This document shows, piece by piece, positions 8,324 through 55,560 of a stretch of 64,000 nt of DNA. Position 1 is the stretch's first letter, and each line of letters starts with the position of its first letter. Source of the stretch: Phaeosaccion multiseriatum (taxonomy: Eukaryota; Protista; Ochrophyta, other classes). Location of the stretch: positions 1,488,001-1,552,000 of the forward strand of contig OZ218956.1 of the NCBI GenBank assembly GCA_965112735.1, read 5' to 3'. The notes under the pieces are model-generated. The model saw nothing but the letters and a program-made list of their open reading frames with translations. It ran no database searches and was not told the DNA's origin. A program made the translations under genes and the position numbers.

Positions 8324-16660
<8,337 letters not shown>

Positions 16661-35668: not shown

Positions 35669-38600
35669 ATGCTCTCCCCCGTGAAGCAGAACAGCTTCGG
35701 GAGGTGGGCCCTCAGTCTGGTGCTGTGCCTCCTCGCAGCAACACCACCCGCAGCTCTCGCATGTCCACCGGGCCAGGAACCAGCACCAGCAGGCCTTTCC
35801 CGTAAGTTCCAAAGGGCGGGGCTGGCTGGCTGCTGCGTGGGGCGTGGTGCGGCCGTGATCCGCTGCGCGCCATCCAGTAGGCCTAGGTAGGCAGCAACTG
35901 CAGCCCCCCCAGGCCGGGCAATTTTCCAAAATAGGCCTAGGCCGCTAGGCGTGCACGGGGCCGACACGGCCGGCCGGGAGGGAGGCTACTAGGTAGCTTG
36001 CTTAGCTACGGCCGGGGGGTTGTAGCGAAGCTCTGAATGAGCGACTGGAGCTGCAGCCATGTGGAAGGCGAGGGTGAGGGTGTCTACACAACCTGCTTTT
36101 TTGCCTCATCTTCTCTCTTCCCACTTTCTCTTCCTCTCGTCACGCGCTCTTCAGCTTCTTGCACAAACTGCCCACTGGGTACATACAACAACGAAGAAGG
36201 TGCATCAGGTCAGTCCAAATGGTGTTGACTGATGTGTCGTGATATAAGGCCAACATATGTGGGGCATGGTGGTGCCGTGTGTTGTTACCCGCCGCCCACT
36301 CTCACTCTCGGACATCGATGCACTTCATCGCTCAAGTTGTTTTGCCACAGCCAACCTTCTTGCCTCCCCCTTCCTCCCCACCCTCTCTCTCACTCGCTTC
36401 GTCTGCTCCAGCCTGCGAGGGCTGCCAGTGTCAAGTCGGGATGGTATGCATCCCTTCGACGGGTGAATGTGGTGAGTGAGTGATGGCGCACGAATTCTGG
36501 AAGCTGTGTTCATTATCTAGCACCTTGCCTCTTCCAGCCACATGCGGGGAAGCAAGACACCCCACCCAGGCGGTTGATCTGTCCGTCGTTTTCGTTGTGC
36601 TTGCTTCACGTGCCTGAGCTTGCTCAAGAGCCGTGCATCCTTAGCCCTGAAGTCCCCCCCCCCCCCCGCCCTGGCTGCCCTTTTCCCTGGGCTGGACTCT
36701 GTCTCCGTACCTGATTTTCCGTCTGACTCTCCCTCCCCTCCCCCTTCTCTGACATCTCCTATCGCCCTGTTCTTCCTGACTTCCTCCACCCCATCGTCCT
36801 CCTCATCCTTCTCTCCGCCCATCATCGACTCTTCCTGCCTCTCGCCCTGCCTCGATAAGCAACCCCCATCCCGTGCTTTTCCTCCTCGGGCAAGAGCCTC
36901 ATCTCATCTCACCTGACTGCCAGCTAATCAGCACCCCTTCTTCCTTGCCTCACCTGGCCTGGCCTGGCCTGCCTGGCCTGCTGTTGTTCCGTGTGGCGAG
37001 TCCGACTTTCGCGGAATAGCCCTCGTCAGCCAGGCCAGCTCAATTGAAGTTGTATCCACCCGCCCACTAACGCGCCCTCGCACTGCTGCTCACGCCCCCC
37101 TTTCCCTGTGTGGCCTCCTCACTGCTTCTTCTTCTCTATGGTTATGCTACATCTTTCCTTGACCGCACTCTCCCTCCTCTTGCCTGCTGCATGAGAAGCC
37201 TCCTTCGCATCCGGCACTGGCATTTCAGAGCACATTTTCATCCCTCAGCCGGGCGTCACTCGCGACGAAGCGATGGATATATGTGCGGCCAATGGGGCCG
37301 CCCTCGTGTCCGTCAACGACCAGACCGAAGACGGGTACGTCAAGGGTCTCATCCCAGATGATACCAACAACGCCCATGTCTGGGTTAGCTTCGAGCGGGA
37401 AGCAAGCACTGCCAAGAGCAACACAGCATTCACATGGGCAGACGGCACGGCGACGGCGGAGAACACGATGGCGGGCGATAGATGGGGCTGGAAGACCAAC
37501 CAGCCGAACAGTAGGGGCAACGACCAGCTCTGTGGCTCGTATTACTTCGAAGACAGGTTCGAGCCCGGCTGGAGCGATATTCCCAGCAGCGACGACCCTG
37601 GCCCTGTGGCTGGCTTCATCTGCGAGCGAGGCATAGGTGCGTAAGGTAGTGGCCTGATGAGGGCTTGGTTGGAAGTGGCGGTACCACACTATTGCGCGCG
37701 CGTTGCTTAAGGGGGAAACGCCCTCTTCATCCTCTTCCACCTCGCTCCTCCTTCTTCATGTTGTAGGTTGTTCACGATCATCACCACCTCCTCCTAGTCC
37801 ACCATCTCTTGCTCTACAGCCCCCCCCCCCCCCCTCTTCCCCGCTTGAAGGGAAAGCGCCTTTTCCTCCTCATCCCCGCTCCTGCTCTTCCTCCACCTCC
37901 ACCACCACCTCCTCCTCCTCCTCCTCCTACTACTACTACTACTCCACCAACTCTTCCACCACCACATCCTCCTCCCCCGCCTCCTCCTCCAACAAGTATT
38001 CCACCCCCCTCTCTTCCCCTTCTGGTCTAACCTCTTAGTCTGCATCGTATTTCGGGCCCTTAGGCACTGATTTGAATTCACCCGCCCCCCAACACGCCCT
38101 TCCGCTGCTACTCGTGTCTTCCTCCTTTTGCTCGTGTCTTCCTCCTGCTGCCGTGCGGCCTGCTTCACTTGCGGCCCCTACTCCTCGAATGGTTGTGACA
38201 CACCATGGGTGGCTGTCACTGAGCAGTGGACTTCACCCAGAGCAATACCTACACCTCTTCGGCCTCGGAGTACTTCTACGTCCCTCAGCCGGGCGTCACT
38301 CGCGACCAAGCGACTGCCCGGTGTGAGCTGAATGGGGCCGCCCTCGTGTCCGTCAACGACCAGACCGAAGACGGGTACGTCAAGGGTCTCATCCCAGATG
38401 ATACCAACAACGCCCATGTCTTGGTTAGCTTCGAGCGGGAAGCAAGCACTGCCAAGAGCAACACAGCATTCACATGGGCAGACGGCACGGCGACGGCGGA
38501 GAACACGATGGCGGGCGATAGATGGGGCTGGAAGACCAACCAGCCGAACAGTAGGGGCAACGACCAGCTCTGTGGCTCGTACTACTTCGAAGACAGGTTC

Positions 38601-41600
38601 GAGCCCGGCTGGAGCGATGTTCCCTGCAGCGACTTCCCTGCAGTGGTTGGCTTCGTCTGCGAGCGAAGCAAAGGTGCGTGAGAAAATCTCAGTGTTCTGA
38701 AGAGGACTTGGTTGGACGTGGTGGTCACACACAATGCCCGCGTGCGGCTTCAGGGGGATACGCTTTCTTCATCCCCGCTCCTCCTCCTCCTCCTCCTCCT
38801 CCTCCTCCTCCTCCTCCTCCTCCTCCTCCTCCTCCTCCTCCTCCTCCTCCTCCTCCTCCTCCTCCTCCTCCTCCTCCTCCTCCTCCTCCTCCTCCTCCTC
38901 CTCCTCCTCCTCCTCCTCCTCCTCCTCCTCCTCCTCCTCCTCCTCCTCCTCCTCCTCCTCCTCCTCCTCCTCCTCCTCCTCCTCCTCCTCCTCCTCCTCC
39001 TCCTCCTCCTCCTCCTCCTCCTCCTCCTCCTCCTCCTCCTCCTCCTCCTCCTCCTCCTCCTCCTCCTCCTCCTCCTCCTCCTCCTCCTCCTCCTCCTCCT
39101 CCTCCTCCTCCTCCTCCTCCTCACTTACGCGCTGTCCGTAGTCGCGGAACATATGTGCTGGCCTTGTCGAGTAGCCTATGCCATGCCCTCCTCCTCCTTT
39201 GCCCCCTCCCTTCCCTCTCCCTTCGTATGCGATAGGTCAAAGTACCACCCCCCTTATCCTCCTCCTCCGGCTTCGACAGGGCTGTGTGCTTTGATTTATC
39301 GCGGGCACCGCCTGACACTGACGCCTAGTACTCCTTGTTTCACCCCCATCTGCTCTTTGCCTGTTCTCATATCTGGACCGCTGTGATGGTGTTGATTCTT
39401 TCCTCCCACGGGCTGCTCACACTGCCTTCCCTCTTCGAACGCATGTCCGTTCGCTCGGACGGCTCCGTGGATGACTGCCCTTGGGACCATTGTGCACTCT
39501 TCTTCTGCTTGCTCGCCTGTGCCAACAAGAGCCCGGCAAGTAAGTGCCCCTCTGAGAATGAGAGTTCCCCATGGACCCTTCCTTTTCTCCTCACCTTACT
39601 GAGCCACCCCTCCTGCTGCCCAAATGTCGAAATGCAGACAGCCCATCACCCCCAGCGCATGCGAGGTCTCCATCTTACATGTCGGTGCCCTCTCTCCCCC
39701 CACCCTGCCCTCGCTACTCATGTGCCCTAACTCTGACAGGCAGGTCGTGATTGAAGTGCTCCGGGCGGACACTATCCCTGGTGGGCCTGATGGTATCCTC
39801 AATCTGGCTGAAGTTGCTTGTTATGATGGCGGCAGCACGAAGATTCCGCTAGACGGCATCACCTTGAGCTCCCTCTACAGACCCTCCACGTTTCTTGCCA
39901 CTCGATGCACCGACGACGACGACACAACCTTCTGTCACTCCGACGAGAACCCGAACGAAGGAGAAGCCGGCAGCCTCACTCTCTACCTTTCTGGCGGACG
40001 TGACCAAGTTGTTACGTCCTGCGAGGTCACTAACCGTGGCAATTGCTGCAAGGACCGCATCAACGGCGCGAGCTTCAAGATCCTCGACGCGGACGGTACT
40101 ACTGAGCTCTACGCCAGCACTTTCCCCTCGTCCGAACAAGACACATACATTTTTGGTAAGTACACGTGGCTGCGTCATGCCCCCGCGGGGTGGGGGGGGG
40201 GGAGTAGAGGGCGATCAAAACTTGTCAGCTGCCATGGTTGAGCTGCTCTTCGATCATATCCCCACCGTAAATGTCGAGGCTGTGCGTACAAACTTACTCT
40301 TGCCTCAAGAAGTGATGTGCCCACAGCCCCTGACGTGGATGCCACCCGCCCCCAGCCAGACGCACCCCTCGCACTGCTGATGCCCCTCGCCCCCCCCACC
40401 TTCCCTTCGTCTGGACAGCGTGTGCCTCAGACTCAACCTCAGCCCTGTGCCCCTCCTGCTCTGTAATCGGCATGCCCATTGGACGATCAATCCCCGCTTG
40501 CCCGCAGCTTGCTACTCACTCCCCTTGCTTTGTGCTTCTTGTCTCCTTTGCCGCTCCTCGCCTTTTGCCCATCTCCTTCCCCTGTCCCTACCATGACTTA
40601 CAGACGTTTCCGCGAAGCCGATCTGCGAGGCGGGCGGTGGAGACTACGTCACCTCCTCCGACACGTGCACCTGCACTTCTGTGAACCCCCTCGATCAACT
40701 TGTGTGTGGGGGACAGGTCTGCCAGGTGGGTACGGTTGCGCCTTTCACCAGCGCTTCTCGCCAAGTCCTTGACTCGCCCCCATGCACTTCCCGCGCTCTT
40801 TGCCACTACAGTCACTCCCTCTCTCTCTACACCAACAGCCTGCTGCCTGCCACTCTTCCTGTACCCCCTGCATCTATCTGCGTGTAGAGTTGCTGTCCCC
40901 CTCCTTGAAGAGGGGCTAGGCGTTGTCAACGCCTTCACCGTACCAATCTCTCTTTCGAGGAAGTGGGCACATGACTGACTTTTGTTCCGCCGCTCCACTT
41001 AATCACGTTGCGCTGTGCTACGTCCCTTCTTCCCTGCCACAAACCGCTCGCCTTCCCTCATGCCACGGTCACGACTCACCAAAACATCCGCAACGATTGG
41101 TTGGCTGGGCCACACCGCGAACATGCCCCCTGTGCCCCCTGTCTACTGCTCGTCCTCACGGCGGCCTGTGGTTGGCTCCCTCGCCACCCTCCTTCGGCTG
41201 ACGCTGCTGCTCTTCACTGCCACGCTCTTCGCATTTTTTCCTGATGGCTGCATTGCTTCTTCGACGTCCCAGGGCACCACATTCAGGGTGAGTGTTTGCT
41301 ATCGCTCGTTCCATCCGCCGTTTGGCTCACACGCCAGGCAGGGGCTGAGAAGTGGTTCTGAGTGTGGCCTCTGCCGCTTGTTGATTGACGTTTGAGATTC
41401 GCCTTTCATTGTATTAGTGCTTTCTTTGCGACACAGCTTTAGCACCTACCTGGCCTTCGTGCCAGTCTAAGCCTGCGCCGTCGCTGTCTGCCAGGGTCGG
41501 GTCCCCCTTCTCCCCCCCCCTCCTTCGGCTGCTTTCATATTGATGCATCATATCGACTCTGCTCACTCCGCCCCCCTCTCTCGCTTGTCCCCACCTCACA

Positions 41601-44600
41601 ATGCTGCTCATCCTGAAGAACTGCGCTGTTGACTGCACGGAAAGCGGTAGCTGCGAGGTGAGTTCGTTTTGGCATAAGGGGGTAGTAGACGTTACACACG
41701 AGTTAGCGGGGACAGGGCGTTGGGGTGCCTCGCCACCTTCTCGCGCCCCCTCCTTCCCACCCCATTTTCTCTCATGCTTGCTCTGCTTTTCTATATTTAG
41801 TTGGTCTCCTCGCCATGTGTGTGGTAATCCTGTCTCGCGGCCTCCTTTCTGTTTGTCACCTTCCGCTTCTCGCTCGCTCCTGTGCGTTCCTCGCCTCCTT
41901 GCGAGCAAGCCTTGTACCCTCCGCCCTCTCCACATGTCTTTGCGTGCACCTGGGCCCTGACGAAGCGAGAATGGACAGGGTGGATGCTATTCTCCTGCTC
42001 ATCCTCTCGAAAGCGCTCTCCCAACACGTGATTGCTCTCTGTGACCTCGCCCCAACCGCCCTCTACAGAATGTTGTCCTGCAGGGAAGTTCCTACGCCAG
42101 TTGCGGAGCGACCAATGCTTGCAGTAACCTTGAGGTGTGTGTGTCACAAATGAGAGGGGGTGGGGGAAAGCCAAGCACGTCGCCGGCCGTGGTCACCCAC
42201 GAGGTTTTTCTATTAACCGCACCTCTGCTGTCTCCTCCGTCGCTCTCTGTCATGCCTCGCGCCGCTGTGAACAACAGACCGAGGAAGACGCATGCTGCCA
42301 GGGGTGGTAAGTGATCGCAGCAGAGTGATGTGCTTGCTGTGCGTGTCCTTGGCGGCGCGGGAGGGCCGTACGAGCTGTTGGCGAACCCCCCCCACACACG
42401 CGGTCGGGCCCTCGCATTTGTCTCGCTCTCTCCTCCTTTGTGCGCTCATGTTTGTTTGCGTTCTGCCGTGCCGCCTCCGTGTTTCCCGTGAATGCTCTAC
42501 CCGTGCGACTTCAATCATACCAAAAAGCCCTTCTGCTGGGGATACGCTCACGTGTGTAGGTAAGAACGGAGTGATACGATAACACGGGCGGCATGGGCTT
42601 TGAAAGCTGTTACACACTGAGCACCCCATAGTGGTCACTCGCTGCTCATTGCCTTGCTGACTGACAGCGTTCGCTAACTGGCTGTTTCTGTCCTTTTCCC
42701 TTCCACCCCTCGGCCTGGTGGTTTTGCTCTCCTCGTGCCACCCTCTTTGCTGCTCTGCTGGTGGGCGGCGCGGCTTCCTTCTCATCCCCGGACTGGTCGG
42801 CATGGTCGTGACGCTGCGTTGTTGCTTCCTGCAGACCCCGACGGAGATGGGATTCCGGACGATTTCGACAAGTGAGTGCACTGAGACATGGAGAGTATCG
42901 AAGCAGAGTGATGCCGTGCTTACGCGCCTTGCGTGTGTGTGTGTGCGCAATGCCCCCGCGTGTCGAAGAGGGTCCACACTGACTGCATTACTTCCTCCCC
43001 CCCTCGTGCTGACTCCTCGCAGCTGCCCGGACACAGCCAACTCCAAGCAAGACGACAGCAATAATGACGGAATAGGAGACGCGTGTGGTGAGAAAGGGCA
43101 GGGCTCGGGGAGAAGCACTCCATTCTGCACGTCCAAACTTAGACTATACATCTCCAGCGCGTTGCCCCTCGTCTTGCGCGCTGGCGTTCCTCCCCCTCCT
43201 CCGCCTCCCCCTCCCCCTCCTTCTCCTCCTCCTCCTCCTCCTCCTCCCTCCTCCTCCCTCCTCCTCCTCCTGTACCTCCGCCGCCTCCTCCGCCGCCGCC
43301 TCCTCCTCCTCCTCCTCCTCCTCCTCCTCCTCCTCCTCCTCCTCCTCCTCCTCCTCCTCCTCCTCCTCCTCCTCCTCCTCCTCCTCCTCCTCCTCCTCCT
43401 CCTCCTCCTCCTCCTCCTCCTCCTCCTCCTCCTCCTCCTCCTCCTCCTCCTCCTCCTCCTCCTCCTCCTCCTCCTCCTCCTCCTCCTCCTCCTCCTCCTC
43501 CTCCTCCTCCTCCTCCTCCTCCTCCTCCTCCTCCTCCTCCTCCTCCTCCTCCTCCTCCTCCTCCTCCTCCTCCTCCTCCTCCTCCTCCTCCTCCTCCTCC
43601 TCCTCCTCCTCCTCCTCCTCCTCCTCCTCCTCCTCCTCCTCCTCCTCCTCCTCCTCCTCCTCCTCCTCCTCCTCCTCCTCCTCCTCCTCCTCCTCCTCCT
43701 CCTCCTCCTCCTCCTCCTCCTCCTCCTCCTCCTCCTCCTCCTCCTCCTCCTCCTCCTCCTCCTCCTCCTCCTCCTCCTCCTCCTCCTCCTCCTCCTCCTC
43801 CTCCTCCTCCTCCTCGTGGGGCTCTGCCATTTATTGAGCACTGCAGTGTCTGTTGGCAAGCTGACTTTCCCACCTCGTTGCGTGTGGCACTCCATGATCT
43901 GATGGTGCCCTCTTTGCTGCTCTACTGGTGGGCGGGGTGGCTTGCTTCTCATCGCCGAACTTGTCATCATGGTCGTGTCGCGGGGATGTGTGCTTCCTTA
44001 TCACCCAGACATCGACGGAGACGGGATTGTGGACGCAGATGACAAGTGAGTGGACGCTGCAGGAGGGTGTAGCGTGTGTGTGTGCGCGCCAGTTTTTTTG
44101 CCCACGAGTGCGCCAACGTTTGATCGGTTTCAGCCAGGCGCAGTCATAGTAACATGGCCGTGCCCTGGTATCCGACCACTGACTGCCATGCATTGCCTCC
44201 TCCCCTTTGCCCTGTGCAGTTGCCCTGGGGTTGCAAACGCTGATCAACAAGACCTCGACGGAGACGGAGAAGGAGATGCTTGTGATGATGGTGAGGGATG
44301 GGTCTTAAGGCAGAGAAGTGGCGAAGGAAAAACCCTGTCATTGCTTTGTTGAGCACTGCTCTGCGTGATGGCAAGCTGACTTTCCCACCTCGTTGCGTGT
44401 GGCACTCCATGGTCTGATGGTGCCCTCTTTACTGCTCTACTGGTGGGCGGCGCGGTGTGCTTCTCATCCCCTAACTTGGCTTCATGCTCATGCTGCTGCC
44501 TGGGATGTGTGCTTCCTTTTCATCCAGACACCGACGGAGACGGGATTGCGAACGCAGACGACAAGTGAGTGCACTGAGATATGGAGAGAATCGAAGCGGA

Positions 44601-47600
44601 GTGATGCCGTGCTGACGTGCTTTGCGTGTGTGTGCGTGCGCAACGCCGCCGTGTGTCGAAGAGGGTCTACACTGACTTTAGTACTTCCTCCCCCCCTCGT
44701 GCTGACTCCTCGCAGCTGCCCGCTCACTGCCAACTCCGACCAAGACGACGGCAATGATGACGGAGTAGGAGACGCGTGTGGTGAGAAAGGGCAGGGCTCG
44801 GGGAGAAGACTCCACACACTTAGATTCTATGCAAGTCCTTCGAACAACATGGGGCCATGTGGTATGACTGTGGTCTGACTGTGGTCTGACTATCGTCGCC
44901 TGACTGTAGTAAGGTCCTGATCCTCCCATCTGCTCCTTGCTTTCTTCCTGCCATCTGGACTCCACACCCTCCCTGGTTACATGCTCGGGGCCTCTCTTTG
45001 CTTGTGCTCTGCTCTGCTCTCCCTGTTGTTTTGTTGCCCACATTGTACGCCAGACCTGAGCCTTCTATGCACGGAGTCATACATTCCGAACCCCCCTTTC
45101 AGGGGAACATGCACGTGTGCCTCTACTTCTGATCAAGTGGTCTGTACCGGCTTGTTTTGCCAGGTGCGTGCGCAGGCAGGGCATCGTCTCACCAGCGATG
45201 GATGGGCCCCGTGCGCCTCCTTGCTCGTTGACCCATTGAGTCCTCGACCCCGACTCTTTGAATCCTCTGCTGATGCGTGGTTCTGCTTGTGCTCTGTGAG
45301 TCTTGGCATCTGTATGCGAGTAAACGAACCCTTCTGACACGCACCCTCTTGCCTCTTATCTTTGCCTCTGCCTTGCCCTTGCTTGGCACCTGCGGCGTCT
45401 GTCTACACTGTGCGGCCGGCCCCGTCCTCATGTTGTTGGGTATCGTGCATGGGGGTCGTCGGACATGGTCGCTCCTTCCCCACTCGTACCCGCGCGTCTC
45501 CTCCTCGCCTCAACAGAGGGCGACATTTGTGGTGAGGGAGCGAATCCTTTCCTTTTCATCTTGCTTGACTTGTGGCAACTCACCCTCGTTCTTGCGCCAT
45601 TTTGATCTAAGCCTGTGCGTACGGACCCACGCTCATCCCAACACCCCAACACCCCGCTGTTGCCCTTTGTCATGCTTTGCTCATGTCTGTCATGACATGC
45701 GGCTGCTCCCTTCCGCCCCTGGCTGCGGCCCACCTCGCCTCTGCTCAACCGTCATGAAGAATTGCGCCGTGACCTGTACGGATTATCGCAGCTGCCAAGT
45801 GAGTGAGGAAGTCTCTTGTAACAGCTACTGCCCCCTCATCAGTCAGCCAGCCCAAGAACTCCACTCTCGCTGCCCGGCCGTCCGATTGGATTTTAGACTT
45901 TGTGTCATACCCTCCTGTGCCACAGGTGGCTGCAGGGAGGGCCCATACGTTGAGCCTTTCTCCTCTCCTGACCTCCCCCCTGTGCCCCTCGCTCTGCTGG
46001 CCTCCTGCCCTCTTTTCTCTTCAACACACACCCTGCTCCACACAGTATGCCTTTTTCCAAGACACTTCGACCGCCACCTGCTCAGGGGAGGACTCCTGTC
46101 ACGTGAGTTCTCAGTCCGCTCTCGCGGCCTGCTTGGCCGATTGTGTATCTTACTTGTGTCCTACCACTGGCGGTACACACCCCAGGCCTCCCCCCTCTCC
46201 TGACCTCCCCCCTGTGCCCCTCGCTCTGCTGGTCTCCTGCCCTCTTTTCTCATCAACACACACCCTGCTCCACACAGGAGGCCCTTTTCCAAGACACTTC
46301 GACCGCCACCTGCTCAGGGGAGGACTCCTGTTACGTGAGTTCTCAGTCCGCTCTCGTAGCCTGCTTGGCCGATTGTGTATCTTGTGTCGTGCCACTGGCT
46401 GGCGGCACACACCCCAGGCCTCCCCCCTCTCCTGACCTCCCCCCTGTGCCCCTCGCTCTGCTGGTCTCCTGCCCTCTTTTCTCATCAACACACACCCTGC
46501 TCCACACAGTATGCCATTTTCCGAGACACTTCGACCGCCACCTGCTCAGGGAAGAGCTCCTGTTACGTGAGTTCTCAGTCCGCTCTCGTAGCCTGCTTGG
46601 CCGATTGTGTATCTTGTGTCGTGCCACTGGCTGGCGGCACACACCCCAGGCCTCCCCCCTCTCCTGACCTCCCCCCTGTGCCCCTCGCTCTGCTGGTCTC
46701 CTGCCCTCTTTTCTCTTCAACACACACCCTGCTCCACACAGTATGCCGAGTTTTATGACACTTCGACCGCAACCTGCTCAGGGGAGAGCTCCTGTTTGGT
46801 GAGTTCTCAGTCCGCTCTCGCTGCCTGCTTGGCCGATTGTGTATCTTACTTGCGTCGTACCACTGGCGGCACACACCCCAGGCCTCCCCCCTCTCTGACC
46901 TCCCCCCTGTGCCCCTCTGCTGACCTCGCACACCCGCCCTGTTTTCTCATCAACGCCCACCCTGCTCCCCTCGAACAAGTCTGCGGACTTGCTTTGAAGG
47001 CAATTCGATCGCAACTTGCGCCGAACCTTACTCCTGTTTTGTGCTTTATTCGTCTCAGCCCACGTTCGCCCTCCTAACCTGGCTATTTCTGTGGCTTACT
47101 TGTTCTGTCGCACCGCCGCTGAACGGCCCATGCCTCAAGCCTTGCTCCTCTCCTGACCTCCCCTCTGTGCAACTGGCCTCTTGCTGACTCACATCGTCAA
47201 CCCCCACACAGGATGCCGACCTTTATTCCAATTCGGCCGCCATCTGCACCGCTGAAACGGCCTGCAGTAATCTCGAGGTGTGTGTGTAAAGGGAAGTGGG
47301 CCAGTCCATGCAAGGGGAAGTACAAGATACACGCTTGTACGTCTCAGATGATGTGATATGTGATACGATGACTGACCATGCATCCGCGCCTGTCTCCCAC
47401 CTTTCCTTGCATCACTCTCGGCTGTGGCTAATAGACAAGTGAGCGTGGTTCTTCATGCTGCCTGGCCACGGTGGATGGAGCTTGGTAAGTGGGTAGTCGC
47501 AGGCAGAGTGCCTTTGAGGAGTGCATTTACTCTCCTGCAGGGGCTGAGTGTTGGCCAAGAAGGCAAGGAGCGCCAATCTCACCCCTCGCGCTTACACCCC

Positions 47601-47685
47601 CCCCCCTTTCCCTTTTGAACTCTCTCCTTTGCCTTCTTGAACCCCGCCCGTGTGCATCCCTGCAACATTTTTAGCCCAACCACGA

Positions 47686-47726
<41 letters not shown>

Positions 47727-50700
47727 ACAGGAGTCAGAGTGTGCGAAGGTAAGCACGAGTGAGATGGTGAGATGGTGAGGACGAGTTGTGCACCTTCATC
47801 TCGTCGCTCCTCGATACGTGCTGCTTGCTTTTCATGGCCGCACAGCCAGTGAGCTCTTCGGGTTCTTTTGCCGTGGCTGCCCTACCCATTGCCCTCCACA
47901 GTCTGACAATCGTTTCTCTCATGCGCTGGCCCTGTTTGTGCTCTGCTGGGCCGCTCCCCACCCCCTCCTGCCATGGCGTGCGTCTCGTGCGGCGGTGGTG
48001 GCCCTCCTGATTGCAGACACCGACGATGACGGCATTCCGAACGATCGCGACAAGTGAGTGATTTAATTCCTTTTATGCGTTTCGGACCGACTTGACAGGA
48101 GTGGATCGCGTTGCTTGTGCGTGTGGGTGTGCTGCGTGGCGTGGGTGTGCCCCGCCAGCAGCGCATTTCTCTGTGGCCTGCGTTAGTAGCCCTGCTTTTC
48201 ATCACTGTCCGCCGTGCGTGCGTGCGTGCGTGCGTACGTGCCCCCCCCAGCGTCTCTCTGTGTCTAGCTAGTCTTTGGTTTTGGCCTAGTCAATACCCCC
48301 CAATCGGAATGCAAGTGCGAATGCAACGAATGTGTGTGCGCGCGCGACGCCCCCGCGTGTCGAAGGTCCACACTGACTGCATTACTTCCTCCCCCCCTCG
48401 TGCTGACTCCTCGCAGCTGCCCGTTCGCATACAACCCCAAGCAAGACGACATCGACGAAGACAGAGAAGAGAAGGAGACGCGTGTGGTGAGAAAGGGCAG
48501 GGCTCGGGGAGAAGCACTCCACACACTTAGATTCTATGCAAGTCCTTCGAACAACATGGGGCCATGTGGTCTGACTGTGGTCTGACTGTTGTCTGACTAT
48601 CGTCGCCTGACTGTAGTAAGGTCCTGATCCTCCCATCTGCTCCTTGCTTCCTTCCTGCCATCTGGACTCCACACCCTCCCTGTTTACATGCTCGGGGCCT
48701 CTCTTTGCTTGTGCTCTGCTCTGCTCTCCCTGTTGTTTTGTTGCCCACTTGGCGCGCCAGACCTGAGCTTTCTATGCACGGAGTCATACATTCCTTTCAT
48801 CGCGGACGACGGCGCTTTGAGGGGAACATGCACGTGTGCCTCTACTTCTGATCAAGTGGTCTGTACCGGCTTGTTTTGCCAGGTGCGTGCGCAGGCAGGG
48901 CATCGTCTCAACAGCGATGGATGGGTCCCGTGCGCTGTTTGCTCGTTGATTCATTGGGTCCACGACCGCAAATCTTTGAATCCTCTGCTGATGCGTGGTT
49001 CTGCTTGTGCTCTGTGAGTCTTGGCATCTGTATGTGAGTAAACGAACCCTTCTGACACGCACCTTCTTGCCTCTTGACGTGGCTGGTGCCTCTGCCTTGC
49101 CCTTGCTTGGCATCTGCGGCGTCTGTCTACACTGTGCGGCCGGCCCCGTCCTCACGTTGTTGGGTATCGCGCATGGGGGTCGTCGGACATGGTCCTTCCC
49201 CACTCGTACCCGCGCGTCTCCTCCTCGCCTCAACAGTCGAAGACATTTAAGGTGAGGAAGCGAGTGCTGGCATGATCATCTTGCTTGATTTGTGGCAACT
49301 CACCCTCGTTCTTGCGCCATTTGATCTAAGCCTGTGTGTACGGACCCACCCTCATCCCAACACCCTACTAACACCCCGCTGCTTCCCTTCGTCCTGCTTT
49401 GCTAATCTCTGTGTGTCGTGGCATGCGGCTGCTCCCTTCCGCCCCTGGCTGGCTGCGGCCCACCTCGCCTCTGCTCAACCGTCATGAAGAATTGCGCCGT
49501 GACCTGTACGGATTATCGCAGCTGCCAAGTGAGTGAGGAAGTCTCTTGTAACAGCTACTGCCCCCTCATCAGTCAGCCCAAGAACTCCACTCTCGCTGCC
49601 CGGCCGTCCGATTGGATTTTAGACTTTGTGTCGTACCCTCCTGTGGCACAGGTGCAGGGCCCACACGTTGAGCCTTTCTCCTCTCGTGACCTCCCCCCTG
49701 TGCCCCTCGCTCTGCTGGCCTCCTGGGCCTGCCCTCTTTTCTCATCAACACCTGCTTGGCCGATTGTGTATCTTACTTGTGTCGTGCCTCTGGCGGCACA
49801 CACCCCAGGCCTCCCCCCTCTCCTGACCTCCCCCCTGTGCCCCTCGCTCTGCTGGTCTCCTGCCCTCTTTTCTCATCAACACACACCCTGCTCCACACAG
49901 TATGCCTTTTTCCAAGACACTTCGACCGCCACCTGCTCAGGGGAGGACTCCTGTGAAGTGAGATCTCAGTCCGCTCTCGCGGCCTGCTTGGCCGATTGTG
50001 TAGACTATCTTACTTGTGCCGTGCCACTGGCGGCACACACCCCAGGCCTCCCCCCTCTCCTGACCTCCCCCCTGTGCCCCTCGCTCTGCTGGTCTCCTGC
50101 CCTCTTTTCTCTTCAACACACACCCTGCTCCACACAGGAGGCCATTTTCGAAGGCACTTCGACCGCCATCTGCTCAGGGCCGTACTCCTGTGAAGTGAGT
50201 TCTCAGTTCGCTCTCGCTACCTGTTTGGCCGATTGTGTATCTTACTTGTGCCGTGCCACTGGCGGCACACACCCCAGGCCTCCCCCCTCTCCTGACCTCC
50301 CCCCTGTGCCCCTCGCTCTGCTGGTCTCCTGCCCTCTTTTCTCTTCAACACACACCCTGCTCCACACAGTTTGCGGACTTTTATGACACTTCGACCGCAA
50401 CCTGCTCAGCGGAGGAGTCCTGTTTGGTGAGTTCTCAGTCCGCTTTCGCCACCTGCTTGGCCAATTGTGTATCTTGTGTCGTGCCACTGGCTGGCGGCAC
50501 ACACCACACCAGCCAGGCCTCCCCCCTCTCCTGACCTCCCCCCTGTGTTCCTCGTTCTGCTGGTCTCCTGCCCTCTTTTCTCATCAACACACACCCTGCC
50601 TGCTCCACACAGGAGGCCATTTTCGAAGGCACTTCGACCGCCACCTGCTCAGCCGGCAGCTCCTGTTACGTGAGTTCTCAGTCCGCTCTCGTAGCCTGCT

Positions 50701-51803
50701 TGGCCGATTGTGTATCTTGTGTCGTGCCACTGGCGGCACACACCCCAGGCCTCCCCCCTCTCCTGACCTCCCCCCTGTGCCCCCCGCTCTGCTGGTCTCC
50801 TGCCCTCTTTTATCATCAACACACACCCTGCCTGTTCCACACAGGATGCGGTCTTTTATGACACTTCGACCGCAACCTGCTCAGCGGAGGAGTCCTGTGA
50901 AGTGAGTTCTCAGTCCGCTCTCGCTACCTGCTTGGGCTTGGCCAATTGCGTATCTTACTTGCGTCGTACCACTGGCGGCACACACGCCAGGCCTCCCCCC
51001 CTCTCTGACCTCCCCCCTGTGCCCCTCTGCTGACCTCGCACACCCGCCCTCCTTTCTCTTCAACGCCCACCCTGCTCCCCTTGAACAAGTCTGCGGACTT
51101 GCTTTGAAGGCAATTCGATCGTAACTTGCCTTGCGCCGAACCTTACTCCTGTTTTGTGCTTTATTCGTCTCAGCCCACGTTCGCCCTCCTAACCTGGCTA
51201 TATCTGTGGCTTACTTCTGTCGCACCGCCGCTGAACGGCCTATGCCTCAAGCCTTGCTCCTCTCCTGACCTCCCTTCTGTGCCCCTGGCCTCTTGCTGAC
51301 TCACATCGTCAACCCCCACACAGTCTACCGACTTTTATGGCAATTCGGCCGCCATCTGCTCCGCTGAAAGGGCCTGCAGATATCTCCAGGTGTGTGTGTA
51401 AAGGGAAGTGGGCCAGTCCATGCAAGGGGAAGTCCAAGAGACACGGTTGTAGCTACGCCCCAGATGACGTGATATGTGATCCGATGACTGACCATCCATC
51501 CGCGCCTGTCTCCCGCCTTTCCTTGTATCACTCTCGGCTGTGGCCAATAGACAATAGGGAATGGTGCTTCATGCTGCCTGGCCACGGTGGAAGGAGCTTG
51601 GTAAGTGGGTAGTCGCAGGCAGAGTGCCTTTGAGGAGTGCATTTACTCTCCTGCAGGGGCTGGGGGTTGGCCAAGAAGGCAAGGAGCGCCAATCCCACAC
51701 CCTCGCGCTTACACCCCCCCCCCCTTTCCCTTTTGAACTCTCTCCTTTGCCTTCTTGAACCCCGCCCGTGTGCATCCCTGCAACATTTTTAGCCCAGGCA
51801 CGA

Positions 51804-51841
<38 letters not shown>

Positions 51842-54800
51842 ACAGGAGTCAGAGTGTGCGAAGGTAAGCACGAGTGAGATGGTGAGATGGTGAGGACGAG
51901 TTGTGCACCTTCATCTCGTCGCTCCTCGATACGTGCTGCTTGCTTTTCATGGCCGCACAGCCAGTGAGCTCTTCGGATTCTTTTACCGTGGCTGCCCTAC
52001 TCATTGCCCTCCACAGTCTGATAATCGTTTCTCTCATGCGCTGGCCCTGTTTGTGCTCTGCTGGGCCGCTCCCCACCCCCTCCTGCCATGGCGTGCGTCT
52101 CGTGTGTCGGTGGTGGCCCTCCTGATTGCAGACACCGACGATGACGGCATTCCGAACGATCGCGACAAGTGAGTGATTTCATTCATTCTATGCATTTCGG
52201 ACCGACTTGACAGGAGTGGATCGCGTTGCTTGTGCGTGTGGGTGTGCTGCGTGGCCTGGGTGTGCCTCCCCAGCAGCGCATTTCTCTGTGGCCTGCGTTA
52301 GAAGCCCTGCTTTCAGGATTGTCCGCCGTGCGTGCGTGCGTGCGTGCGTGTGCCCCCCCCAGCGCCTCTCTGTGTCTAGCTAGTCTTTGGTTTTGGCCTC
52401 GTCAACACCCTCCTCTCTGCTCCACTTGACAAATTCAAGTGCGACTGCAGCAACTGTGTGTGCGTGCGCTACGCCCCCGCGTGTCGAAGAGGGTCTACAC
52501 TGACTGCATTACTTCCTCCCCCCCTCATGCTGACTCCTCGCAGCTGCCCGTTCACAGCCAACGAAAACCAAGAGGACATCGACGAAGACGGAGTAGGAGA
52601 CGCGTGTGGTGAGTTCTTTCCCTCCTCCTCCTCCTCCTCCTCCTCCTCCTCCTCCTCCTCCTCCTCCTCCTCCTCCTCCTCCTCCTCCTCCTCCTCCTCC
52701 TCCTCCTCCTCCTCCTCCTCCTCCTCCTCCTCCTCCTCCTCCTCCTCCTCCTCCTCCTCCTCCTCCTCCTCCTCCTCCTCCTCCTCCTCCTCCTCCTCCT
52801 CCTCCTCCTCCTCCTCCTCCTCCTCCTCCTCCTCCTCCTCCTCCTCCTCCTCCTCCTCCTCCTCCTCCTCCTCCTCCTCCTCCTCCTCCTCCTCCTCCTC
52901 CTCCTCCTCCTCCTCCTCCTCCTCCTCCTCCTCCTCCTCCTCCTCCTCCTCCTCCTCCTCCTCCTCCTCCTCCTCCTCCTCCTCCTCCTCCTCCTCCTCC
53001 TCCTCCTCCTCCTCCTCCTCCTCCTCCTCCTCCTCCTCCTCCTCCTCCTCCTCCTCCTCCTCCTCCTCCTCCTCCTCCTCCTCCTCCTCCTCCTCCTCCT
53101 CCTCCTCCTCCTCCTCCTCCTCCTCCTCCTCCTCCTCCTCCTCCTCCTCCTCCTCCTCCTCCTCCTCCTCCTCCTCCTCCTCCTCCTCCTCCTCCTCCTC
53201 CTCCTCCTCCTCCTCCTCCTCCTCCTCCTCCTCCTCCTCTGCCTGCATCCTCCTCCCCTCCTCTTCCGCTTCGCTCCTCCTCCTCGTATGACTCTGCTGA
53301 CGTCTTCATGCTCCCTCTCCCTCCCCCCCCCCCTCTCTCTCAATTTGTCTCTCTGTCTCTGAGTAGAGGACTATCCTATAGCGCTCAACCTGGTCGAGGG
53401 CGATTACGTCGCAACAGTGAAGGGAAGCCTTGACACTGCGCCGCCCTCGGATAATGTGAAGTGTGGTGATGCTGGGGCCGGCGTCAACCAACCTACCGTC
53501 ACTTACCGATTCACTGCTCCCTCCCTCGGCGGCACTCTCACTGCTGATACCTGTAGTGATGTCAACACCGACTTCGACACGCAAATCGCTGTCTTCAGTG
53601 TATCATCCTCAGATGGCAGCCTCTCGTGCGTGTCCGACGCGGCCGAGAGTGATAACAGTGGGGGTACTAGTACTACAGCCCCGTGTTCTGTTGGGATGAA
53701 AGCGTCCAACGTGCATGTCATGGGGGGCTTGGAGTATGCTGTTCGAGTATACCCCGCCGCCGCCACTGGTACTACGCGAAGATGGCGAAGATTGCAGTCT
53801 GGTGGAAGCGGTTTCACGCTCAGTGTAGTAGTCAGAGGTGAGAGAGTGAGCGAGCTTGATGCAGTGTATGGGACGGAGGTCGGGACCAGGGAGTGATCTA
53901 GCCATGGCAATTGGAGGGCACTGGACTGGCCTGGCTTGCTGCCGCCCCCCTATTGTTTACAGGGCTCATCTACCATGCGTCGCTCCCTCCCCTTGCTTGT
54001 CCTCGGCCCCATCGTGAAGAGCCCCGCTGCCACTGCCCAGAGCTATTCGAATATTGCTTGTGTGGAAGGAAGCTGCTGGACTGACTCACCGTCGTACGGG
54101 GGCTGTGTCCTTCTGTTTGTGTTTTTTTGTGTACTATGAGAACGCGCTCTTTCTCCATCTCTGTCTCTCTCTTATCTCTCTGTCCCTCCCTACCTCCCTC
54201 CCTCTCTTTCCCTCTGTGTGCATGTGTCGATTCCTGTGTCTGGCTGCACTTCGTGCGGCGCTTCTCAGGCTCTTCGGTGGAGGTGCAAGGGGACCCCATG
54301 GTCTTCGGTTTCCAGCACCAAGTCTTCCTCTTCAAGGGAGCTGACGACGCCTGGTACGCCGCCTTGACCGAGAAGCACCTGCAGTGGAACTGGCGACTGG
54401 GGGTCTTCCCTTCCTGCGAGAACGGCGCCATGCCGGTGAGTGTCTGCGCAGCAAATCGAGGCGGCCAGCCAGTTGCACACAGCCCAAGAGCTGAAAGGCT
54501 TGCTGTATATATATATAGGCTGACTCCACTTGGGACAGTTGGGGGCGGCGTGGAATTGCACTACTGAGTGGAATCACTCTCTCTTGCCGGCCGGGAGCTC
54601 CACCATTTCCGTCATCTGTGCAGCTTCCCGTTGCCAAAGCTAATACCGACCTCCCCACTGTGGCCTGACTGCCGACCTCCTCTTGTGACTGCTTTGATGT
54701 AACCCCCCCCCCGCCACCTACTCCAACACCTGTCCCTCGTACGGACACGCACGCACCCGCAGACGTACGTCACGGCCTCGTCCTTCACCTTCCCTCCCCT

Positions 54801-55560
54801 CGACGGGGTCGATATGCCCGAGTCCAGGGTGCTGGTGGAGGTGATTGATCAGGCCAAGTACAACCCTGCCTACATTGAAGGGGAGGAGCTCTCGCCGCGA
54901 GCCGAGCAGATTCTGGGCTACGGCTCCCTGGCAGTCCACATCGAGGACAAGAGGATCGTCAAGCCGGGGCTGTACCGCATGGCCAACGGCGGCACCGTGA
55001 TGGCGTTCAACGCGTACGGCCCCTGCCAGGTGAAGCGCGACCTCCACATGATGGAGGAGCTGAACGAGGCGGAGAGGGTCAAGACCTCTCGCCGTCTCTC
55101 GGAGATGGCAGTGGATGACGACCTGGCGGCGCTGCTGGCCGTGGAGTCCCGCCTGCACAAGGCGGAGGACAGGGCCTTGTGCGAGGAGTGGATCGCCGAC
55201 AAGCGAATCACTCGTAACCTTTTCACCGAGCCAGGGTCATGGGCCAGTGTCTACATCTTTACGGACACGTATTCGTTCCAGGTGGACTATCGGCAAGAGC
55301 TCGAGCGCTGCTACGCTCACGTGATTGACGTTGGATTCATCCACAAGCCCTCCGACGTGGGTGTGGAGACGTGGAGCGGGGTCATGGGTGAGACGCAGCG
55401 GCTGAGACTTGACAGCGAAGGCAAGCCCATCCTGAGGGACAGGGACCTCATCCTGTCTTCCTCCAAGGACGAGGACTACGTCGTGGACGGACCATGGGGA
55501 ACAGACTTTGTGGCCCGTTTGGACAGCGCATGGGAGCCGGAGTCGCCATCCTCCGAGTGA
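35669..55560 (+). CDS. Large secreted modular lectin/adhesin, ~1650-1700 aa, about 47 exons: SP - Cys-rich (GCC2/3-like) - CTL - CTL - F-type lectin - solenoid module A - 3xTSP3 - module B - TSP3 - module C - TSP3 - PPC-like - GDP(H)/VWD-like; one exon (48417-48486) carries a +5 nt frameshift
   Basis: Signal peptide MLSPVKQNSFGRWALSLVLCLLAATPPAALA. Exon phases chain consistently through GT-AG sites (e.g. 35669-35801, 36155-36208, 36412-36471, 37229-37636, 38227-38673, 39530-39539, 39740-40155, 40604-40725 ... 53367-53837, 54269-54435, 54763-55560). No C-terminal TM helix was seen. Confidence 0.8.
37229..37636 (+). CDS. Exon: C-type lectin domain 1
   Basis: A...C...GAALVSV, VWVS, FTWADG, W...QPN, C, WSD, FICE. 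Phase 1-1 exon of 408 nt. Confidence 0.85.
   Translation, partial: STFSSLSRASLATKRWIYVRPMGPPSCPSTTRPKTGTSRVSSQMIPTTPMSGLASSGKQALPRATQHSHGQTARRRRRTRWRAIDGAGRPTSRTVGATTSSVARITSKTGSSPAGAIFPAATTLALWLASSASEA
38227..38673 (+). CDS. Exon: C-type lectin domain 2
   Basis: Paralogue of domain 1 with WSDVPCS...FVCE. Phase 1-1 exon of 447 nt. Confidence 0.85.
38778..39122. repeat. Pure (CCT)n tract, ~340 bp, intronic
   Basis: Directly visible. Confidence 0.95.
39740..40155 (+). CDS. Exon: F-type lectin (fucolectin / F5-F8 type C)-like domain
   Basis: LNLAEV...SS.Y...A....D....TFCHS...EVTNRGNCCKDRINGA. Confidence 0.75.
42835..44780 (+). CDS. Three thrombospondin type-3 (Ca-binding) repeats, each split over two exons
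   Basis: DPDGDGIPDDFDN/CPDTANSKQDDSNNDGIGDAC; DIDGDGIVDADDN/CPGVANADQQDLDGDGEGDACDD; DTDGDGIANADDN/CPLTANSDQDDGNDDGVGDAC. Confidence 0.88.
43298..43815. repeat. Pure (CCT)n tract, ~515 bp, intronic
   Basis: Directly visible. Confidence 0.95.
45960..47277 (+). repeat. Exon-intron tandem array B: ~232-bp units with 57-nt phase 0-0 exons at 46046, 46278, 46510 and 46742; pseudo-exon 46980-47040; cap exon 47212-47277
   Basis: Each unit has cacacag|57 nt|gtgagt, encoding xAxFxDTSTATCSGxxSCx. Confidence 0.92.
49680..51389 (+). repeat. Exon-intron tandem array C: 57-nt exons at 49901, 50138, 50370, 50613 and 50845; exon-less unit at ~49750; pseudo-exon 51090-51155; cap exon 51324-51389
   Basis: Same unit structure as array B. 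Confidence 0.92.
52620..53238. repeat. Pure (CCT)n tract, ~620 bp, intronic
   Basis: Directly visible. Confidence 0.95.

What the first reader, a model, noticed from the sequence alone, without database searches (positions are those of the whole stretch)
46046..51389. One-exon-per-coil cassette array with hypervariable codons and homogenised introns in a secreted lectin: candidate receptor/adhesin diversification system
Seen: nine intact 57-nt phase 0-0 exons encode YAFFQDTSTATCSGEDSCH, EALFQDTSTATCSGEDSCY, YAIFRDTSTATCSGKSSCY, YAEFYDTSTATCSGESSCL, YAFFQDTSTATCSGEDSCE, EAIFEGTSTAICSGPYSCE, FADFYDTSTATCSAEESCL, EAIFEGTSTATCSAGSSCY and DAVFYDTSTATCSAEESCE. A2, F4, T7-S8-T9-A10, C12, S13, S17 and C18 are invariant, with very few synonymous changes. 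Positions 1, 3, 5, 15, 16 and 19 vary radically, often by multi-nucleotide codon swaps, while the ~175-nt introns are nearly identical. Inference: each exon is one rung of a disulfide-stapled beta-solenoid whose x-A-x-F-x strand forms a variable binding face. Symmetric exons can be added, lost or skipped without frameshift. Established analogy: exon-encoded hypervariable LRR/TPR repeats in brown-algal ROCO and NB-ARC genes. Here the repeat is a different Cys/Thr type, in an extracellular protein.
Basis: partly seen in the sequence, partly recalled or inferred. Interest (0 to 1): 0.92.

Follow-up and report, generated by a model that had tools for sequence, protein, structure and literature searches.

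The report
Hypervariable one-repeat-per-exon cassette arrays
Two young tandem arrays of 57-base exons, each encoding one 19-residue Cys/Thr repeat of a large secreted multi-lectin protein, change about seven times faster at six codons than their own introns do; this points to strong selection for new surface residues in an orphan repeat type, though splicing and fold remain untested.

Summary
Nine 57-nt, phase 0-0, AG/GT-bounded exons lie where stated. They form two arrays, A (4 exons) and B (5), inside a ~4-kb segmental duplication.

**Variability.** Codons 1, 3, 5, 15, 16 and 19 vary at all 18 nucleotides (pi 0.54). The introns have pi 0.078 and the rest of the exon 0.083. One pair has 0/183 differences in its flanks but 7 in the exon.

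**Array turnover.**
- Four-gamete violations across the invariant core show that half-exons have been re-assorted.
- Each array holds one dead cassette.
- Array B carries a 101-nt scar where an exon was deleted.

**Gene model.** 22 exons (40604-48486) read in one frame. A 5-nt insertion in a TSP3 exon (48417-48486) then breaks the frame before array B as assembled.

**Relatives.** None found: 1.84 billion protein representatives, PDB, Pfam, metagenome, viral and prokaryotic contigs.

**Untested.** The available runs are DNA-like, so splicing is inferred only. A spliced module has no reference, so AlphaFold was not run, and the beta-solenoid and binding-face ideas remain inference.

**Verdict.** This is germline diversifying selection plus unequal crossing-over, working like brown-algal LRR exon arrays but in a new extracellular repeat. 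Other first-stage notes report similar arrays elsewhere in this genome.

The parts
46046..46798 (+). Array A: four live 57-nt phase 0-0 cassette exons (46046-46102, 46278-46334, 46510-46566, 46742-46798) separated by 175-nt introns
49901..50901 (+). Array B: five live 57-nt cassette exons (49901-49957, 50138-50194, 50370-50426, 50613-50669, 50845-50901); introns of 180, 175, 186 and 175 nt
45517..45531 (+). 15-nt micro-exon (x-x-T-F-x), first strand of the split first repeat of module A. Paralogs lie at 41273-41287 and 49237-49251. The A and B copies differ at 6/15 nt while flanking introns differ by about 6%
45760..45798 (+). 39-nt 'cap' exon (C-x5-C half of the first repeat). Paralogs lie at 41619-41657 and 49490-49528. 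The A and B copies are identical (0/39)
47212..47279 (+). 68-nt terminal repeat exon of module A (phase 0 to 2, gtgtgt donor). Paralogs lie at 42069-42136 and 51324-51391. The A and B copies differ at 11/68
46980..47040 (+). Dead cassette in array A: 4-nt insertion in the exon and the donor changed to gtgctt. Its twin at 51090-51155 carries a further 5-nt insertion
49672..49817 (+). Remnant unit in array B: a 101-nt deletion (junction about 49750/49751) removed a cassette exon plus 18 and 26 nt of its flanking introns
48417..48486 (+). TSP3-like exon (A.tsp2) with a 5-nt insertion relative to its three paralogs. It shifts the frame and gives a stop at 48764-48766, upstream of array B
45054..45163 (+). 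Cys-rich exon that opens module A. Paralogs lie at 40604-40725 and 48761-48882
47675..47748 (+). Linker exon with a run of 13 Asp codons. The paralog at 51793-51863 has 12
40604..44780 (+). Module 0: the same exon series but with no 57-nt cassette (two repeats only), followed by three TSP3-like exon pairs
35669..40156 (+). Upstream part of the presumed same gene. It holds a signal-peptide-like first exon (35669-35801), two C-type lectin exons (about 37229-37637 and 38227-38676) and an F5/8-type-C-like exon ending about 40156 in phase 1, which matches the next exon at 40604

Best explanation
The 232-bp units are young exon-plus-intron cassettes inside a modular extracellular gene. Its order is signal peptide, two C-type lectin domains, an F5/8-like domain, then three paralogous modules, each followed by TSP3-like calcium-binding repeats. 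Each 57-nt symmetric exon adds one 19-residue repeat (x-A-x-F-x, then a T-S-T-A-T-C stretch, then S-C) to a stack of 2, 6 or 7 repeats. Unequal crossing-over between the near-identical introns adds and removes cassettes without frameshift. Exchange within the invariant 22-nt exon core re-assorts half-exons. After duplication, replacements at six codons (1, 3, 5, 15, 16, 19), often several nucleotides per codon, were fixed about seven times faster than changes in the introns or the rest of the exon. That means positive, diversifying selection on residues that alternate with the invariant core residues and so probably face the solvent. This is germline evolution of a binding or surface module, not a somatic diversification machine. 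Shown: architecture, phases, in-frame concatenation, rate contrast, reassortment, and cassette death and loss. Inferred: splicing, the stacked (solenoid-like) fold, disulfides, surface exposure and ligand binding.
For: Exons and splice sites. The 22 modelled exons from 40604 to 48486 read in one frame, and TSP3 motifs continue across exon joins. Hypervariable codons: 18/18 sites variable, 1.39 minimum mutations per site, pi 0.54. Introns give 0.19 per site and pi 0.078; the rest of the exon gives pi 0.083. Third positions of the invariant codons have pi 0.139. A2 versus A3: 0/183 in the flanks against 7 exon differences, all in codons 1, 3, 5, 15 and 16 (binomial p = 3e-8). A1 versus B1: the only exon differences are two nucleotides of codon 19. 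An independent two-copy test between blocks A and B: introns 5.6-6.0% diverged, cap 0/39, tsp1 0/37, but micro-exon 6/15 and terminal repeat 11/68. Four-gamete violations occur only between the N- and C-halves. Dead cassettes. Exon-deletion scar.
Against: No transcript evidence. Runs X1-X4 are DNA-like unitigs that hold the introns at even depth, with no splice joints. A 5-nt insertion breaks the frame between arrays A and B as assembled, so five of the nine exons may not be translated, unless a cryptic GT donor 5 nt upstream is used. Whole-exon pN/pS is only about 1.5, based on very few synonymous sites. Choosing the six codons after seeing the data inflates that particular contrast, although the unselected whole-exon test still gives p = 9e-5. 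The fold was not modelled.
Confidence: 0.6

Rival explanations
1. Concerted evolution rather than fast evolution. The cassettes are old; gene conversion keeps homogenising whole units, and selection merely preserves old differences at the six codons.
For: Half-exon reassortment shows that exchange among units does occur. Three exons (A4, B3, B5) share linked synonymous variants in codons 2, 4 and 10, which points to older exon subtypes. Intron variants are mosaic relative to exon types.
Against: Hypervariable and invariant codons interleave at a 3-nt scale (1/2/3/4/5), and conversion tracts cannot homogenise codons 2 and 4 while sparing 1, 3 and 5. Synonymous third positions of the invariant codons (pi 0.139) are close to the introns (0.078), not to the 0.54 seen at the variable codons.
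Confidence: 0.15
2. A decaying or non-functional locus. The arrays are relics of a pseudogene, or are never spliced in, and the pattern has no present function.
For: The frameshifting 5-nt insertion and early stop before array B. Dead cassettes and a deletion scar. No RNA support.
Against: Relaxed constraint cannot push six codons to seven times the intron rate while ten codons stay invariant. All nine exons keep AG/GT sites, open frames and both Cys. 22 exons upstream of the break stay in frame.
Confidence: 0.12
3. A regulated isoform generator. Cassettes are alternatively or mutually exclusively spliced, as in Dscam or schistosome micro-exon genes, to give many protein variants per cell or population.
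For: All cassettes are symmetric (phase 0-0), so any subset can be skipped in frame.
Against: There is no docking/selector-type complementarity between the flanking and unit introns. Intron RNA is unstructured (z = +1.27) and has no Rfam match. No joints were seen, but the runs were DNA-like, so this remains untested rather than excluded.
Confidence: 0.08
4. The conserved face, not the variable one, is the working surface. The invariant T-x-T-x-T ladder with a C-x5-C staple acts as a flat lattice-, ice-, mineral- or glycan-binding face (or an O-glycosylation site), and the variable positions only tune solubility or prevent mis-stacking of near-identical rungs.
For: T7, T9 and T11 are invariant in all nine exons with no synonymous change. 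The C-x5-C spacing and Thr ladder recall insect beta-helical antifreeze proteins (from memory, not tested). The neighbouring poly-Asp exon and the TSP3-like calcium-binding exons fit a mineral or calcium context.
Against: No sequence match to any solved structure or Pfam family. This reading does not by itself explain rates above neutral at the six codons.
Confidence: 0.2

Closest known systems
Ectocarpus ROCO-LRR and NB-ARC-TPR exon-shuffling arrays (Zambounis et al. 2012, PMC3341825; also PMC11378527)
   Same: One repeat per symmetric phase-0 exon of constant length (72 nt there, 57 nt here). Inactivated exon copies sit inside the introns. Cassette number varies. Positive selection falls on a few repeat positions.
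   Different: The repeat is not LRR or TPR (no Pfam hit). The protein is extracellular, with lectin and TSP3 domains rather than a cytoplasmic GTPase or NB-ARC. The rate contrast here is calibrated against the cassettes' own introns.
Insect beta-helical antifreeze proteins (Tenebrio-type 12-residue T-C-T repeats); recalled from memory
   Same: Short regular repeat, a Thr ladder and a C-x5-C pair in each repeat.
   Different: The repeat is 19 residues, not 12. There is no detectable sequence similarity to any PDB chain. The fold was not modelled and nothing shows ice binding.
Schistosoma micro-exon genes (PMC10526429)
   Same: Secreted proteins built from runs of short symmetric exons, which allows in-frame exon skipping.
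   Different: MEG exons are 3-81 bp with long introns (up to 5 kb), are not tandem copies of one repeat, and their variation comes from documented alternative splicing. Here the introns are 175 nt, the cassettes are homologous, and splicing variation is unshown.
Accelerated evolution of venom genes (conotoxins, snake PLA2), where exons diverge faster than introns; from general knowledge
   Same: Replacement changes in mature-peptide codons outpace intron divergence.
   Different: Those are whole-gene paralogs. Here the effect is seen between tandem cassettes within one gene and is confined to six of 19 codons.
Dscam-type mutually exclusive exon clusters
   Same: Tandem arrays of homologous alternative-looking exons in an extracellular protein.
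   Different: No docking/selector complementarity. The cassettes read naturally in series as a repeat stack.

Membership tests
Exon-per-repeat shuffling arrays (Ectocarpus ROCO-LRR type) | Each repeat encoded by one symmetric (phase 0-0) exon of constant length | tested here: met
   Nine 57-nt exons, all phase 0 to 0 in the 22-exon in-frame model
Exon-per-repeat shuffling arrays (Ectocarpus ROCO-LRR type) | Inactivated repeat exons retained inside the introns; variable cassette number | tested here: met
   Dead cassettes at 46980-47040 and 51090-51155. Deletion scar near 49750. Modules of 2, 6 and 7 repeats
Exon-per-repeat shuffling arrays (Ectocarpus ROCO-LRR type) | Positive selection on specific repeat positions | tested here: met
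   Intron-calibrated counts: 1.39 against 0.19 minimum mutations per site, p = 5e-13. No codon site-model (PAML) test was run
Exon-per-repeat shuffling arrays (Ectocarpus ROCO-LRR type) | LRR or TPR repeat joined to a ROC-COR or NB-ARC domain | tested here: not met
   No Pfam family for the repeat. The context is C-type lectin, F5/8-like and TSP3-like. It works like this family but is not a member
Beta-solenoid (disulfide-stapled beta-helix) | Short regular repeat with alternating conserved (inward) and variable (outward) positions | tested here: met
   A2 and F4 are invariant and alternate with variable positions 1, 3 and 5. S8, A10 and C12 alternate with T7, T9 and T11
Beta-solenoid (disulfide-stapled beta-helix) | Repeats stack as coils in three dimensions; Cys pairs form intra-rung disulfides | not testable with these tools
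   A spliced module has no reference, so AlphaFold was left out. The PDB profile search found nothing
Thrombospondin type 3 repeat (flanking exons) | Match to Pfam TSP_3 (Asp-rich calcium-binding motif with N-C-P) | tested here: inconclusive
   Single exons hit PF02412 at E = 0.002-0.35, below the cutoff, because each exon holds part of a repeat. The full motif reads across exon joins
C-type lectin domain (upstream exons) | Pfam Lectin_C above the gathering score | tested here: met
   39.1 and 35.3 bits against a cutoff of 22.6
Dscam-like mutually exclusive exon cluster | Docking site complementary to a selector sequence in front of each variant exon | tested here: not met
   Only short, unrelated inverted repeats
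Schistosome-type micro-exon gene | Protein variation by documented skipping of symmetric micro-exons | not testable with these tools
   No RNA runs were found; the laid runs are DNA-like

The most novel reading that the evidence does not exclude
This locus may be one member of a genome-wide family of secreted, exon-per-repeat Cys-repeat proteins; other first-stage notes list arrays of 15-23 such exons on other chromosomes. Their solvent-facing codons would be under continual diversifying selection, and their cassettes re-assorted by recombination, possibly with exon skipping. That would amount to a germline-encoded, rapidly evolving recognition repertoire (pathogen, prey, mate or kin recognition) built on a previously undescribed repeat fold in a protist.
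Probability: 0.2. Interest if true: 0.85.

Novelty: new variant of a known kind. Interest (0 to 1): 0.62.

Why it matters
The contrast here is unusually clean and internally calibrated: six codons are saturated with replacements while the introns and the other 13 codons of the same 232-bp units differ by about 8%. The repeat has no detectable relatives in any searched collection. If the exons are expressed, the locus extends the exon-shuffling receptor idea, known from cytoplasmic brown-algal LRR proteins, to an extracellular lectin and calcium-binding scaffold. It also offers a compact system for studying how cassette duplication, intragenic recombination and positive selection together build a variable binding surface.

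Tried and rejected
**Relatives of the repeat**
- A profile of the 11 repeats against 1.84 billion protein representatives gave one hit, a bacterial Ig-like repeat protein (P0001). I judge it chance similarity.
- PDB profile search: nothing meaningful.
- Pfam on each repeat, on the Cys-rich exons and on the read-through ORFs: nothing.
- ESM Atlas on one repeat: scores below 0.5.
- The search for related loci in metagenome, viral and prokaryotic contigs: no confirmed relative.
- An exact core-DNA scan of metagenomes returned five loci. All are out-of-frame chance matches in unrelated contigs (four of them 73% GC).

**Transcript evidence**
- Both run searches returned the same DNA-like runs.
- The single read-laying run showed introns at exon-like depth and no splice joints.
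- A contig joint that skips exactly 928 nt (4 x 232) has a 23-nt side and low depth, so I treat it as a de Bruijn repeat artefact.

**Other ideas rejected**
- Structured or functional intron RNA: no Rfam match, and folding z = +1.27.
- Dispersed element or introner: within this window the intron motif occurs only in the arrays.
- Dscam-like docking and selector sites: none.

- The organism was not identified.
Full report
**1. The observation**

Reading 45500-52000 and a motif scan of all six frames found the nine exons at exactly the stated coordinates. Each is 57 nt, preceded by a ...cacag acceptor and followed by gtgagt (gtgaga once), and the peptides are as listed. Tandem Repeats Finder reports 232-nt periods at 45962-46968 and 49750-51078. 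The 22-nt invariant exon core occurs nine times exactly, against zero in 100 shuffles.

The per-codon table confirms ten invariant residues. Only four variable sites are synonymous. Codons 1, 3, 5, 15, 16 and 19 each carry four to six alleles.

**2.

The nine exons are two arrays, A with four and B with five, lying in a roughly 3.7-4.1-kb segmental duplication. I modelled exons by splice sites and paralogy. Each block has this exon series:

| Exon | Size and phase |
|---|---|
| Cys-rich exon | 110-122 nt |
| Micro-exon (x-x-T-F-x) | 15 nt |
| 'Cap' exon holding a C-x5-C pair | 39 nt |
| Cassette exons | N x 57 nt |
| Terminal repeat exon | 68 nt, phase 0 to 2 |
| Asp-run linker exon | 32 nt in block 0; 74 and 71 nt in blocks A and B |
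| TSP3-like exon pairs | 37 nt + 65-71 nt |

- The micro-exon plus the cap exon together make an 18-residue first repeat, so the first repeat is itself split by an intron.
- An earlier block (40604-44780) has the same series with no cassette. The three modules therefore hold 2, 6 and 7 repeats.
- The 22 modelled exons from 40604 to 48486 read in one frame, and the TSP3 motif runs across exon joins. This is good indirect support for the splice model.
- Single TSP3-like exons hit Pfam TSP_3 below threshold.
- Upstream on the same strand are two Pfam C-type lectin exons and an F5/8-type-C-like exon (weak Pfam; Atlas features 0.94). That exon's phase-1 end matches the next exon.
- The first exon, at 35669, has a signal-peptide-like sequence by eye. 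I did not resolve continuity between the second lectin exon and the F5/8-like exon.

**3. A break in the gene**

The TSP3-like exon at 48417-48486 is 70 nt, whereas its three paralogs are 65 nt. The alignment shows a 5-nt insertion. With the canonical donor the frame shifts and a stop follows at 48764-48766.

Array B, which holds five of the nine exons, therefore lies behind a frameshift as assembled. A GT five nucleotides upstream would restore the phase, but only RNA can say whether it is used. I could not re-check the insertion in reads.

**4. How unusual is the variability?**

For the seven units with a complete array intron:

| Region | Variable sites | Minimum mutations per site | Pi |
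|---|---|---|---|
| Six hypervariable codons | 18/18 | 1.39 | 0.54 |
| Introns | 26/160 | 0.19 | 0.078 |
| Rest of exon | 7/39 | 0.18 | 0.083 |

- Fisher's test for the hypervariable codons against the introns gives p = 5e-13. The unselected whole-exon test gives p = 9e-5.
- Third positions of the invariant codons have pi 0.139.
- A2 and A3 have 0/183 differences in their flanks but seven in the exon, all in codons 1, 3, 5, 15 and 16 (p = 3e-8).
- A1 and B1 differ only by two nucleotides of codon 19.
- Nei-Gojobori means are pN 0.205 and pS 0.138, against an intron divergence of 0.083.

The A/B block duplication gives an independent check. Introns differ by 5.6-6.0%, the cap exon by 0/39, tsp1 by 0/37 and the linker by 2/71. 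The micro-exon differs by 6/15 and the terminal repeat by 11/68.

So the units as a whole are young, and the same strand positions evolve far above the local neutral yardstick. The introns are not specially homogenised; they match the conserved part of the exons.

**5. Turnover and reassortment**

- Four-gamete violations occur only between codons on opposite sides of the invariant core (1 vs 16, 1 vs 19, 5 vs 19). Identical N-halves or C-halves recur in different combinations. This indicates exchange within the core or the introns.
- Each array keeps one dead cassette between the last live exon and the terminal exon. It has a 4-nt insertion and a spoiled donor, and the B copy has a further 5-nt insertion.
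- Array B has a 101-nt deletion that removed one exon and its splice sites.

**6. Relatives**

A profile of the 11 repeats found one hit among 1.84 billion representatives. It is a bacterial Ig-like repeat protein with a similar short motif, which I regard as chance. PDB, Pfam and the Atlas gave nothing. Metagenome, viral and prokaryotic contig scans gave no confirmed relative.

The profile is short, and this genome's own proteins appear to be absent from the library. 'Orphan' therefore means there are no close tandem arrays elsewhere.

Other first-stage notes, which I did not check, list similar Cys-repeat micro-exon arrays on other pieces of this genome.

**7. Expression**

Both run searches returned the same runs. 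Once laid, they hold introns and exons at similar unitig depth and show no splice joints, so they are DNA-like. Splicing is therefore inferred, not shown.

No docking/selector complementarity was found. No Rfam family matches and the intron shows no fold.

**8. Fold**

The alternation of invariant A2 and F4 with variable positions 1, 3 and 5, and of S8, A10 and C12 with T7, T9 and T11, fits short beta strands. A 19-residue coil with a C12-C18 staple is plausible. It is inference only.

AlphaFold of a spliced module was left out because such a sequence has no reference. The invariant T-x-T-x-T ladder could equally be the working face, which is one of the rival explanations.

**9. Interpretation**

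The best explanation (0.6) is germline diversifying selection on exposed positions of a stacked repeat. Array size is set by unequal crossing-over and half-exons are re-assorted by recombination.

| Rival | Confidence | Main point against |
|---|---|---|
| Concerted evolution preserving old differences | 0.15 | Variable and invariant codons interleave at the codon scale |
| Non-functional relic | 0.12 | Rates above neutral alongside invariant codons |
| Regulated isoform generator | 0.08 | Untested |
| Conserved Thr face as the functional surface | 0.2 | Compatible with the main reading |

**10. Comparison and novelty**

The locus works like the Ectocarpus ROCO-LRR exon arrays: 72-nt phase-0 exons, inactivated exons in the introns, and positive selection (PMC3341825). 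It is not a member, because the repeat is not LRR or TPR and the protein is extracellular. It also recalls schistosome micro-exon genes (PMC10526429) and the accelerated evolution of venom genes.

I rate it a new variant of a known kind, with interest 0.62. The rate contrast is striking and the repeat is an orphan. Against that, expression, fold and the integrity of the gene are unproven, and similar arrays seem common in this genome.

Noticed in passing
window 48417-48486: A 5-nt insertion (a short tandem duplication) in a TSP3-like exon, relative to paralogs at 43023, 44716 and 52544. It shifts the frame and gives a stop at 48764-48766. A GT 5 nt upstream could compensate.
   Followed up: partly
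window 41273-41287, 45517-45531, 49237-49251: Three paralogous 15-nt micro-exons keep only T-F. The A and B copies differ at 6/15 nt while their flanking introns are about 94% identical. They form the first strand of a repeat that is split by an intron.
   Followed up: yes
window 43188-43815, 52621-53285 and about 38700-39100: Very long (TCC)n/(CCT)n runs of more than 200 copies. The first two fall in modelled introns, directly after TSP3-like exons. The status of the third, coding or intronic, was not resolved.
   Followed up: partly
window 45054-45163 vs 48761-48882: The Cys-rich exon of block A is 12 nt shorter (in frame) than its B paralog and its block-0 paralog. The Asp run in the linker exon is 13 codons in A and 12 in B.
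   Followed up: partly
window 45961 to 46890 (read laying joint): One low-depth contig in run X1 skips exactly 928 nt, which is four 232-nt units. It could be an array-length variant or a de Bruijn repeat artefact (side 23 nt).
   Followed up: no
window about 10000-16400, minus strand: ORF fragments whose sequence looks by eye like an M1-family (PepN-like) aminopeptidase, interrupted by introns rich in simple repeats. No family search was run on them.
   Followed up: no
window 53417-53896 and 54814-55560: Two long open exons downstream of array B on the + strand have no Pfam match. They are presumably the C-terminal part of the same gene if the frame is kept.
   Followed up: partly
window 46101, 50900-50901 (read laying other letters): Variant letters in the read contigs fall in hypervariable codon 19 of cassettes A1 and B5. 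They may be alleles, or paralogous cassettes laid across.
   Followed up: no
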